Source: Octopus bimaculoides (taxonomy: Eukaryota). Taken from it: 58,877 nt of DNA. The notes under the pieces are model-generated. The model was given only the letters and a program-made list of their open reading frames with translations, ran no database searches and was not told the DNA's origin. This document shows, piece after piece, positions 37,577-37,974 of this stretch (position 1 is the first letter of the stretch; every line of letters begins with the position of its first letter). Location of the stretch: positions 110,645,010-110,703,886 of the forward strand of contig NC_068984.1 of assembly GCF_001194135.2 (NCBI RefSeq), written 5' to 3'. The translations under genes were made by a program, and so were the position numbers.

Positions 37577-37974
37577 TTTGTCATTAATAAATTCAAATTA
37601 CGACAAATGTAAATAAACAAATGAAGTTTGCTTTTAGAAGCGTTGAGATGTCTTTTAGAAAGTTAAAGAAGTGATTTTAAATTCTCAATCGCAGAATAAT
37701 GCTAATAATATAGCCTGAACAGGATAAACTATCCCTATTTTGCAGAGAAAAGTGTAGGTGGCTAGCTGTTTTGCAGAGGAATTTGTAGTGGGTAGTTTAG
37801 CTTAATCGGTCAAAGCATCGTGACATGTAATCACGGGGATGTGAGTTCGAGTCCACAGCTAGCCACCTACACTTTTCTCTGCAAAATAGGGATAGTTTAT
37901 CCTGTTCACGCTATATTATTAGCATTATTCTGTGATTGAGAATTTAAAATCACTTCTTTAATTTTGTCATTAAT
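37577..37974. mobile_element. tRNA-containing foldback insertion: 107-bp inverted arms plus 12-bp flanking direct repeat
   Basis: Arms 37663-37769 and 37855-37961 differ at 2 positions; TTTGTCATTAAT occurs at 37577-37588 and 37963-37974. Confidence 0.85.
37791..37864 (+). tRNA. tRNA-Thr(TGT)-like sequence (pseudo-tRNA or element-borne)
   Basis: Acceptor GGTAGTT/AGCTAGC (one G.G mismatch), D stem GCTT/AAGC, anticodon stem CGTGA/TCACG with loop CATGTAA, T arm GTGAG-TTCGAGT-CCAC (1-nt deletion). A-box TAGCTTAATCGG, B-box GTTCGAGTC, TTTT at 37873-37876. A33 is non-canonical. Confidence 0.7.

What the first reader, a model, noticed from the sequence alone, without database searches (positions are those of the whole stretch)
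37577..37974. tRNA-Thr-like cloverleaf enclosed by near-perfect 107-bp inverted arms and a 12-bp direct repeat
Seen: arms 37663-37769 and 37855-37961 with 2 mismatches. The right arm starts inside the tRNA 3' acceptor strand, and the left arm extends about 75 bp further than the right. TTTGTCATTAAT flanks both sides. The low arm divergence implies a recent event. Inference: the layout matches twin priming of a retroposed RNA (TSD, 3' part in one orientation, inverted 5' head, TSD) with an unusually large duplication. Alternatives are a PLE-style inverted terminal structure or a DNA foldback element that captured a tRNA. It resembles none of the other SINE families in this window, and I do not recognise it as a described family. 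Caveat: the left 12-mer can also pair with ATTACGACAAA just inside it, so it may be element sequence rather than a TSD.
Basis: partly seen in the sequence, partly recalled or inferred. Interest (0 to 1): 0.78.

Follow-up and report, generated by a model that had tools for sequence, protein, structure and literature searches.

The report
Head-to-head tRNA-like retroposon insertion
A degenerate tRNA-like retroposon sits in this octopus-type repeat landscape as two copies joined head to head inside one 12-bp target duplication, probably because both cut DNA strands primed reverse transcription; it is a real but single-copy oddity of moderate interest to transposon specialists.

Summary
There are 107-nt inverted arms (37663-37769 / 37855-37961) with 2 mismatches, an exact 12-nt direct repeat at both outer ends (about 6e-4 expected by chance), and a weak tRNA-like cloverleaf whose last 13 nt lie in the right arm.

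The tRNA is degenerate, so it is a tRNA-derived head, not a working gene.

The termini are not inverted repeats, because the left arm lies 74 nt inside the duplication. That rules out a MITE or foldback DNA transposon. DNA fold-back repair is ruled out because the outer flanks are not palindromic.

The best reading is one target-primed insertion of a roughly 266-nt RNA, made of a leader, a tRNA-like head, a 94-nt body and a 74-nt tail. Both nicked strands were extended, giving one full-5' copy without the tail and one 5'-truncated copy with it.

The 107-nt overlap is far outside L1 twin-priming norms. The layout matches the published insertion signature of Penelope-like elements, which octopus genomes carry, but no ribozyme motif was found and no partner could be tested.

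A 20-nt leader complementary to the trailer suggests the source copy was also palindromic.

No second copy could be found, because no cephalopod genome was reachable. Family status and novelty stay open.

The parts
37577..37588 (.). Left copy of the 12-nt target-site duplication TTTGTCATTAAT
   Evidence: Exact direct repeat D6. About 6e-4 expected by chance. The only two exact copies in the window.
37589..37662 (-). 74-nt 'tail': the 3' extension of the minus-oriented copy, absent from the right-hand copy. It has no poly(A) and ends ...GTAATTTGAATTT in sense.
   Evidence: No homology to the sequence right of the right arm (P=0.6). No similar sequence elsewhere in the window. No Rfam family.
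37663..37769 (-). Left arm: a 5'-truncated inverted copy. It is the reverse complement of the tRNA 3' 13 nt plus the 94-nt body.
   Evidence: 107 nt with 2 mismatches to 37855-37961.
37770..37789 (+). 20-nt leader upstream of the tRNA-like head. It is about 80% complementary to the trailer at 37868-37889 and is a diverged direct repeat of 37739-37758.
   Evidence: D3 and I4. TRF period 31. Complementarity P < 5e-5. Leader, tRNA and trailer fold as an extended stem, z = -4.6.
37790..37867 (+). Degenerate tRNA-like head. A-box-like TAGCTTAATCGG at 37798-37809. B-box-like GAGTTCGAGTCC at 37843-37854. Nominal anticodon TGT.
   Evidence: ARAGORN. Rfam tRNA 31.9 bits against gathering 29, with a G.G acceptor mismatch, a 1-nt deletion in the T arm and A at position 33. 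The minimum-energy fold is not a cloverleaf, z = -0.56.
37855..37961 (+). Right arm: the last 13 nt of the tRNA-like head plus the 94-nt body of the plus-oriented copy that has the full 5' end.
37873..37876 (+). TTTT run a few nt after the tRNA-like 3' end, a possible Pol III terminator inside the unit
   Evidence: Read directly from the sequence.
37962..37962 (.). Junction base between the right arm and the TSD. The TTT that starts the TSD matches AAA at 37659-37661 in the left copy, which is 3-nt microhomology at the internal priming site.
   Evidence: Alignment.
37963..37974 (.). Right copy of the 12-nt target-site duplication

Best explanation
This is one retrotransposition event of a small tRNA-headed RNA of about 266 nt. 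The RNA consists of a 20-nt leader, a roughly 78-nt degenerate tRNA-like head, a 94-nt body and a 74-nt tail without poly(A). A staggered break left 12-nt overhangs. Both 3' ends were used as primers for reverse transcription. The plus-strand end (...TTTGTCATTAAT-3') primed at the RNA 3' end. It copied the tail and body and stopped inside the T arm, which gave 37589-37769. The minus-strand end (...ATTAATGACAAA-3') primed internally, 74 nt before the RNA 3' end, at a 3-nt AAA/UUU microhomology. It ran to the RNA 5' end, which gave 37962 back to 37770. The two cDNAs were joined head to head at a CTGT/CTAT microhomology, and gap repair produced the 12-nt duplication. Shown here: the anatomy, the TSD, the absence of terminal inverted repeats and the degenerate tRNA. 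Inferred: the RNA intermediate, the two priming events and the enzyme. My more specific guess is that the enzyme was a Penelope-like element RT-endonuclease rather than a LINE. I give that about 0.3 of the 0.55. PLE insertions habitually carry a head-to-head 5'-truncated copy and an extension at only one end, and the purified PLE protein nicks and extends both strands from two internal start sites. The leader/trailer complementarity implies that the source copy already had an inverted partner upstream. That would make the palindrome recurrent in this lineage rather than a one-off.
For: The exact 12-nt flanking repeat is unlikely by chance, and a 12-nt TSD is the size expected for target-primed insertion. 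The outer ends are not inverted repeats, so this is not a TIR transposon. One copy has the tail and the other has the 5' head, and they overlap by 107 nt, which is exactly the geometry of two cDNAs from one RNA species. The arms differ at 2 sites, one of CpG-deamination type, and unique flanks lie on both sides, so the sequence is real and the event is not brand new. PLE literature describes an inverted 5'-truncated copy adjacent to the 5' end and a 30-40 bp tail at one end only (PMC8557442). It also describes head-to-head as the commonest arrangement, AT-rich TSDs of 8-10 bp, a 31-bp tail, and capture of unrelated sequence between pLTRs (PMC3846280). The purified protein cleaves and extends both strands from two internal RT start sites that define the tail (PMC11167929). 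Penelope elements are present and expanded in octopus genomes (PMC8967140). Leader/trailer complementarity has P < 5e-5.
Against: Only one copy is available. No second copy was found in the window or in any reachable collection, so the existence of a family, its consensus ends and its partner are untested. No hammerhead ribozyme or any other Rfam family is present in the arms or tail, although canonical PLE pLTRs carry one (Naiad-type PLEs do not). The tail is 74 nt against the usual 30-40 nt. The TSD is 12 nt against the 8-10 nt reported for rotifer PLEs. I found no paper describing a PLE-mobilised tRNA-headed element. A TTTT run just after the tRNA would terminate many Pol III transcripts before the body. 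For a LINE enzyme, 5' inversions of SINE-size inserts and 107-nt overlaps are very rare.
Confidence: 0.55

Rival explanations
1. Classical LINE twin priming as a one-off accident. An ordinary LINE-dependent tRNA-SINE RNA was copied from its 3' end by the first nick and internally by the second nick, with an exceptionally long 107-nt overlap. This shares the geometry of the best explanation and differs only in the enzyme and in being non-recurrent. Its 0.25 is counted inside the 0.55 given there.
For: The geometry and the 12-nt TSD fit. L1 5' inversions go with TSDs of 10-20 bp, and the single non-L1 inversion seen experimentally was in Nimb-2, whose TSD peak is about 12 bp. There is 3-nt microhomology at the internal priming site. 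LINE remnants are common in the window.
Against: In humans the overlap between the two cDNAs has a median of 12 bp (quartiles 4-17), and only 0.02% of germline Alu insertions are inverted. ZfL2-1 gave no inversions at all. There is no poly(A) tail. The leader/trailer complementarity would then need a second, independent, earlier accident of the same kind in the source copy.
Confidence: 0.25
2. The palindrome is the normal inherited structure of the family. A roughly 374-nt hairpin element with a tRNA-like loop region would be copied as a whole, from a read-through transcript or as DNA. On this reading the inverted arms were not made at this insertion.
For: The leader and trailer are complementary, which shows that palindromy around the tRNA predates the present arms. 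The hairpin is very stable.
Against: The arms are 98% identical while the older leader/trailer pairing is only about 80%, so the present arms are a new layer and not an inherited one. The termini are asymmetric (74 nt on one side only) and are not inverted repeats, and a 12-nt TSD fits no common DNA-transposon superfamily. The internal Pol III promoter cannot transcribe the left arm.
Confidence: 0.12
3. Two-step origin. A simple insertion of the unit was followed by a local DNA-level inverted duplication, through replication template switching, fold-back repair, or a second nearby insertion of the same family.
For: Inverted duplications do arise by template switching. The arms differ at two sites.
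Against: Fold-back synthesis from either microhomology would either give a junction without the 31-nt repeat or would copy the right flank, including the 12-mer, in inverted orientation to the left of the arm. Instead a unique 74-nt tail and a direct 12-mer are seen (reasoned). Two independent insertions would not share one TSD around the pair (about 6e-4 by chance).
Confidence: 0.07
4. A relic of LTR-retroelement reverse transcription. The right part would be a tRNA primer joined to minus-strand strong-stop DNA. The left part would be the complementary U3'-R-U5-PBS plus-strand strong-stop DNA. This follows the old 'strong-stop DNA' model for the origin of tRNA-derived SINEs, proposed from squid and octopus SINEs (Ohshima and Okada, early 1990s; recalled from memory, not retrieved here).
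For: The left arm ends with a 13-nt perfect complement of the tRNA-like 3' end (ACAGCTAGCCACC), which is a PBS-like length. The right copy stops abruptly 94 nt after the tRNA, like a strong stop, while the other strand's copy runs 74 nt further.
Against: There is no TG...CA at the presumed LTR ends, no CA just before the PBS-like segment, no internal retroelement sequence, and the TSD is 12 nt rather than 4-6 nt. The 13-nt boundary is equally well explained as an arbitrary 5'-truncation point; a boundary 8-18 nt from the tRNA 3' end has a prior of about 6%.
Confidence: 0.04
5. Assembly artefact: a chimeric hairpin created by the short-read assembler.
For: The window is a gap-rich short-read scaffold with 19 N runs. 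The PLE literature notes that such structures trouble short-read assemblies. The orientation of the 85-nt spacer between 107-nt arms is hard to fix with short reads.
Against: The structure lies in the middle of a 2.85-kb gap-free contig with unique flanks on both sides. It is bracketed by a direct 12-nt repeat, and the arms differ at two positions. An artefact would produce none of these.
Confidence: 0.04

Closest known systems
Complex insertions of Penelope-like elements (an inverted 5'-truncated copy plus a one-sided 'tail'; Arkhipova laboratory descriptions, PMC8557442, PMC3846280; in-vitro mechanism PMC11167929)
   Same: Two copies lie head to head with both 3' ends pointing outward. One copy is 5'-truncated. 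An extension is present at only one outer end. The pair is flanked by a short AT-rich TSD containing ATT. The inner junction shows short homology. Both-strand nicking and extension explains the layout.
   Different: No PLE ORF, no tandem pLTR and no hammerhead motif is present. The tail is 74 nt, not 30-40 nt. The TSD is 12 nt, not 8-10 nt. The 5' part is a tRNA-like Pol III-type head, which has not been described for PLE-dependent elements in the papers I could search. No sequence similarity to a PLE could be tested.
L1 twin priming / 5'-inverted insertions (Ostertag and Kazazian 2001, as summarised in PMC12016303 and PMC4245944)
   Same: The order is TSD, inverted 5' segment, direct 3' segment, TSD. 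The TSD falls in the 10-20 bp range. There is microhomology at the internal priming site.
   Different: The overlap is 107 nt against a median of 12 bp. The insert is SINE-sized. There is no poly(A). The partner is evidently not L1. Evidence for an earlier round of the same event in the source copy is not expected for a rare accident.
tRNA-derived SINEs of octopus (the tRNA-Core / tRNA-Deu families that dominate octopus repeats, PMC8967140)
   Same: A tRNA-like head with A-box and B-box-like motifs, a unit length of about 266 nt, a TSD, and a position among other SINE copies in the same window.
   Different: No significant similarity to the two neighbouring SINE families or to anything else in the window. 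A TTTT run follows the head directly. The leader is complementary to the trailer. Copy number is unknown.
MITEs / foldback DNA transposons
   Same: Long inverted repeats and a stable hairpin.
   Different: The inverted repeats are not terminal, the ends are not complementary, and a 12-nt TSD fits no common superfamily. The window's own Mariner-type element at 24007-24878 shows what a true TIR element looks like here.

Membership tests
Functional tRNA gene | A canonical cloverleaf with a 7-bp acceptor stem, a 5-bp T stem, U33, and a covariance score well above threshold | tested here: not met
   Rfam gives 31.9 bits against a gathering score of 29. There is a G.G mismatch in the acceptor stem, a 1-nt deletion in the T arm and A at position 33. 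The minimum-energy fold is not a cloverleaf. It is tRNA-derived, not a working tRNA.
tRNA-derived SINE | A tRNA-related head with internal Pol III A and B boxes | tested here: met
   TAGCTTAATCGG (37798-37809) and GAGTTCGAGTCC (37843-37854) lie within the ARAGORN/Rfam hit.
tRNA-derived SINE | Many dispersed copies with different flanks and TSDs | not testable with these tools
   No other copy lies in the 58.9-kb window. There were no hits in the protein index, metagenome, GTDB or viral collections. No cephalopod genome, Dfam or Repbase was available.
tRNA-derived SINE | A 3' end shared with a partner LINE, or a poly(A) or microsatellite tail | tested here: inconclusive
   There is no poly(A). 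The tail ends in AATTTGAATTT. There is no similarity to any LINE remnant in the window. Genome-wide partners could not be searched.
L1-type twin-primed insertion | An inverted 5' segment and a direct 3' segment within one TSD of 10-20 bp | tested here: met
   The TSD range is from PMC4245944.
L1-type twin-primed insertion | A small gap or overlap at the inversion point (median overlap 12 bp) and a 3' poly(A) | tested here: not met
   The overlap is 107 nt and there is no poly(A) (reference values).
Penelope-like element insertion (or PLE-dependent non-autonomous element) | A head-to-head inverted 5'-truncated copy next to the full copy, inside one TSD | tested here: met
.
Penelope-like element insertion (or PLE-dependent non-autonomous element) | A short extension ('tail') at only one outer end | tested here: met
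   The 74-nt extension at 37589-37662 is on the left only. It is about twice as long as the usual 30-40 nt.
Penelope-like element insertion (or PLE-dependent non-autonomous element) | A hammerhead ribozyme motif in the repeat (canonical clades) | tested here: not met
   No HHR appeared at E <= 10 in 37450-38100. Naiad/Chlamys-type PLEs also lack it.
Penelope-like element insertion (or PLE-dependent non-autonomous element) | Sequence identity of the 3' region with an autonomous PLE (RT plus GIY-YIG) of the same genome | not testable with these tools
   The arms and tail match no other sequence in the window, so no partner PLE terminus lies within it. Only the presence of Penelope in octopus genomes is documented.
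MITE / foldback DNA transposon | Terminal inverted repeats that abut the TSD, with a TSD length typical of a superfamily | tested here: not met
   The left arm starts 74 nt inside the TSD. The ends AAATTCAAATTACG... and ...TCACTTCTTTAAT are not complementary. The TSD is 12 nt.
LTR-retroelement strong-stop relic | TG...CA LTR ends, CA just upstream of a PBS complementary to the tRNA 3' end, and a 4-6 bp TSD | tested here: not met
   Only the 13-nt PBS-like complement is present, and it is a by-product of the inverted repeat. The other features are absent.

The most novel reading that the evidence does not exclude
The locus is a copy of an undescribed kind of non-autonomous retroposon: a tRNA-headed 'SINE' that is mobilised by Penelope-like elements rather than by a LINE. 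Its head-to-head arms and one-sided tail would be the PLE both-strand priming signature. Its source copies would themselves be palindromic, as the leader/trailer complementarity suggests, so the hairpin around the tRNA-like head would be a heritable family trait that is regenerated at each round.
Probability: 0.2. Interest if true: 0.65.

Novelty: new member of a known kind. Interest (0 to 1): 0.4.

Why it matters
If the PLE reading is right, this would be a compact natural read-out of the still poorly understood PLE integration mechanism: both strands primed, with two internal start sites. It would also be the first sign that PLEs can drive tRNA-headed SINE-like parasites in cephalopods, whose genomes are dominated by SINEs. 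If it is only a one-off twin-primed SINE, it is a curiosity. It would show that inverted insertions with roughly 100-nt overlaps occur outside mammals. It also marks a 300-bp near-perfect hairpin that could affect local replication, small-RNA production or assembly.

Tried and rejected
1. Other copies in the window. A sensitive blastn of 37500-38050 against the window found only the self and inverted hits.
2. Copies elsewhere.
   - The 47-aa open frame across the tRNA and arm, searched against the 5.8-billion-protein index, had no candidates.
   - The exact 23-mer GTTCGAGTCCACAGCTAGCCACC and the 20-mer CTGCAAAATAGGGATAGTTT were scanned in metagenome, GTDB and viral contigs. All gave nothing except one Chitinophagaceae hit whose flanks do not match, so it is chance.
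3. Finding the source assembly or independent assemblies through ORFs of the window. Three look-ups were not on record.
4. A paralogous empty site. The joined flanks had no informative hit in the window.
5. Hammerhead or other structured RNAs in the element. None were found. A whole-window E-value scan returned only microsatellite noise.
6. The hairpin between the left 12-mer and ATTACGACAAA. It is not significant, P about 0.05, so it does not undermine the TSD.
7. DNA fold-back or self-priming models. I worked these through by hand. Priming from the leader on the trailer predicts no 31-nt repeat. Priming at the CTG/CAG microhomology predicts an inverted copy of the right flank on the left. 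Neither is seen.
8. cDNA snap-back in the plus orientation. Rejected, because the left copy contains 74 nt that the right copy lacks.
9. CORE-SINE relationship. It remains a weak lead.
10. Similarity to the two neighbouring SINE families. Not significant.
11. Literature on PLE-mobilised tRNA-SINEs. Nothing was found (one search was a malformed query). The Ostertag and Kazazian paper and a citable source for the strong-stop model could not be retrieved.

Full report
**Setting**

The window is a gap-rich, microsatellite-rich eukaryotic scaffold with 19 N runs and many dinucleotide arrays. It carries tRNA-derived SINE copies of the kind I recall, from memory, as typical of octopus genomes, for example at 37096-37300 on the minus strand and 39020-39235 on the plus strand. 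It also carries LINE remnants and a Tc1/mariner fragment. The finding lies in the middle of a 2.85-kb gap-free stretch, 36382-39235.

**Observation**

- The repeat finder reports inverted arms 37659-37769 / 37855-37965 (111 nt, 97%) with 85 nt between them. It also reports the exact 12-mer TTTGTCATTAAT at 37577-37588 and 37963-37974.
- A base-by-base alignment gives 107 nt (37663-37769 against 37855-37961) with two mismatches. One of them is a CpG-to-TpG type change in the right arm.
- A 12-nt exact repeat positioned like this is expected about 6e-4 times by chance. These are the only two exact copies in the window.
- ARAGORN calls tRNA-Thr(TGT) at 37790-37867. Rfam's tRNA model scores 31.9 bits, just above its gathering score of 29.
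- As single-stranded DNA the 398 nt fold at -129 kcal/mol, z = -24.
That pairing has P about 0.05 for a random 30-mer of local composition.

**The tRNA**

It is degenerate.
- It has a G.G mismatch in the acceptor stem, a one-base deletion in the T arm and A instead of the near-universal U at position 33.
- On its own it does not fold into a cloverleaf better than shuffled sequence, z = -0.56.
- It keeps good A-box-like and B-box-like motifs at 37798-37809 and 37843-37854.

It is therefore a tRNA-derived head or pseudogene, and the 'Thr' assignment means little.

1. The right arm begins at about tRNA position 63, so it contains the last 13 nt of the tRNA-like head plus 94 nt of downstream 'body'.
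2. The left arm is followed outward by 74 nt (37589-37662) before the TSD. The right arm abuts the TSD directly. These 74 nt have no counterpart on the right or elsewhere in the window.
3. The 20 nt between the left arm and the tRNA (37770-37789), together with the 5' acceptor strand, are a diverged direct repeat (about 80% identity) of the inner end of the left arm (D3; TRF period 31). Put another way, the tRNA's 5' flank is complementary to its 3' flank, with P < 5e-5 (I4). Leader, tRNA and trailer together form an extended stem, z = -4.6.
4. At the right end, the TTT that starts the TSD matches the AAA at 37659-37661 in the other copy. That is 3-nt microhomology at the point where the right copy ends.
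5. At the inner junction, the left arm's last bases CTGT overlap the CTAT expected upstream of the leader homologue. That is also microhomology.
6. A TTTT run sits at 37873-37876, just after the tRNA-like head.

**What the anatomy excludes**

- A TIR, MITE or foldback DNA transposon requires complementary ends that abut the TSD. Here the ends (AAATTCAAATTACG... and ...CACTTCTTTAAT) are unrelated, and the inverted repeat is subterminal on one side only. Twelve bp is also not a usual DNA-transposon TSD.
- DNA fold-back repair or template switching would make the sequence outside the arms palindromic too, or would give a junction without the 31-nt repeat. Instead there is a unique tail and a direct 12-mer.
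- Two independent insertions would not share one TSD around the pair.
- A snap-back of a single cDNA cannot create 74 nt that the other copy lacks.
- An assembly artefact would not produce unique flanks, a TSD and two arm differences.

**Best explanation**

Read in the tRNA's sense, the two halves are two partial copies of one roughly 266-nt unit, made of leader, tRNA-like head, body and tail.
- The right, plus-oriented copy has the complete 5' end but stops 74 nt short of the 3' end.
- The left, minus-oriented copy has the 3' end but is truncated in the T arm.
- Their 3' ends point outward and each abuts one copy of the TSD.

That is what results when both 3'-OH ends of a staggered break prime reverse transcription on the same RNA species and the two cDNAs are then joined.

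**Which enzyme**

For L1, the overlap between the two cDNAs has a median of 12 bp (quartiles 4-17), and only 0.02% of germline Alu insertions are inverted (PMC12016303). In cell-culture assays 5' inversions were seen almost only with human L1. There were none with zebrafish L2 and one with Nimb-2 (PMC4245944). A 107-nt overlap in a SINE-size insert without poly(A) is therefore a poor fit to LINE twin priming.

[quoted passage not shown] In rotifers the typical insert is head to head, flanked by an 8-10 bp AT-rich TSD, with a 31-bp tail on one inverted repeat, and unrelated sequences can be carried between such repeats (PMC3846280). The purified PLE protein nicks and extends both strands. It starts reverse transcription at two internal sites, and the interval between them is the tail (PMC11167929). 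Penelope elements are present and lineage-expanded in octopus (PMC8967140).

The present locus reproduces that signature: head-to-head copies, one 5'-truncated, a one-sided extension, and an AT-rich TSD containing ATT. The leader/trailer complementarity adds that the source copy already had inverted sequence just upstream of its tRNA. This suggests the structure recurs in this lineage, which is expected for a systematic property of the enzyme and not for a rare accident.

**Limits**

This is one copy. I could not reach any cephalopod genome, Dfam or Repbase. All attempts to find further copies failed, whether by protein-index look-up of the open frame, by exact k-mer scans of three public collections, or by exact-ORF look-ups.

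No hammerhead ribozyme is present. The tail is twice the usual length, and the TSD is slightly longer than reported PLE TSDs. I found no publication describing a tRNA-headed PLE-dependent element.

So I put 0.55 on 'one double-primed retro-insertion'. Of that, about 0.3 goes to PLE-type machinery and about 0.25 to an exceptional LINE twin priming. Smaller weights go to the following:
- an inherited palindromic family structure (0.12);
- a two-step rearrangement (0.07);
- a strong-stop-DNA relic (0.04), suggested by the 13-nt PBS-like boundary but lacking LTR hallmarks;
- an artefact (0.04).

**Novelty and interest**

As it stands this is a new, or at least unplaced, member of known kinds: a tRNA-derived retroposon carrying a 5' inversion. 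It would become a new variant only if the PLE link and the family-wide palindromy are confirmed. The structure is real and mechanistically informative, but the decisive genome-wide comparison is still to be done. Interest is 0.4.

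Noticed in passing
window 24007-25085: A Mariner/Tc1-type DNA transposon remnant with roughly 200-nt terminal inverted repeats (24007-24206 / 24679-24878, 85%). A third TIR copy at 24934-25085 forms a near-palindrome (152 nt, 89%) around a (TG)n array. 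It gives spurious sub-threshold miRNA hits in Rfam (MIR6217, 91 bits against gathering 110).
   Followed up: partly
window 37096-37300 (-), 33463-33620, 29325-29450, 39020-39235 (+): Several copies of at least two abundant tRNA-derived SINE families of the kind I recall, from memory, as typical of octopus. One copy ends 270 bp upstream of the finding and another lies 1 kb downstream. Neither is significantly similar to the element studied.
   Followed up: partly
window 6019-6405 (-), 38600-38794 (+), 57348-57584 (-): Three open frames share a conserved motif (…D/EVS.P.D.N…KE.EK…KY.DL..E..R.W…IP/IPI.I.ALS/G…). It looks like the C-terminal region of a retroelement ORF. There is no Pfam hit. One copy lies about 630 bp downstream of the finding. 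The clade was not identified.
   Followed up: no
window 2-298 (+) and 323-583 (+): Open frames that resemble the C-terminal part of a LINE reverse transcriptase ORF (a cysteine-rich end...TGPTCLRCRQS), cut by an 843-nt N gap. There is no Pfam hit at E <= 0.01.
   Followed up: partly
window 50473-50832 (+): A Tc1/mariner transposase N-terminal DNA-binding fragment, with Pfam hits HTH_SB, HTH_23 and HTH_Tnp_Tc3_2.
   Followed up: yes
window 5755-6088: A 147-bp unit repeated twice in tandem at 93% identity, overlapping the 3' side of the retroelement-like frame at 6019-6405.
   Followed up: no
window 43731-43828 / 46869-46966: A 98-nt inverted pair at 93% identity, 3 kb apart. It is probably two copies of one SINE family in opposite orientation.
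   Followed up: no
window 38430-38546: A (TCG/TCA)n trinucleotide array of about 100 nt just downstream of the finding, and a (TA)n array at 38047-38095, 70 bp from the right TSD. PLEs are reported to favour microsatellites, but the insertion itself is not inside one.
   Followed up: no
L001 5914-5933 (Chitinophagaceae MAG JBMLQZ010000268.1): The only exact public match to the arm 20-mer. The flanks are unrelated, so it is a chance hit.
   Followed up: yes
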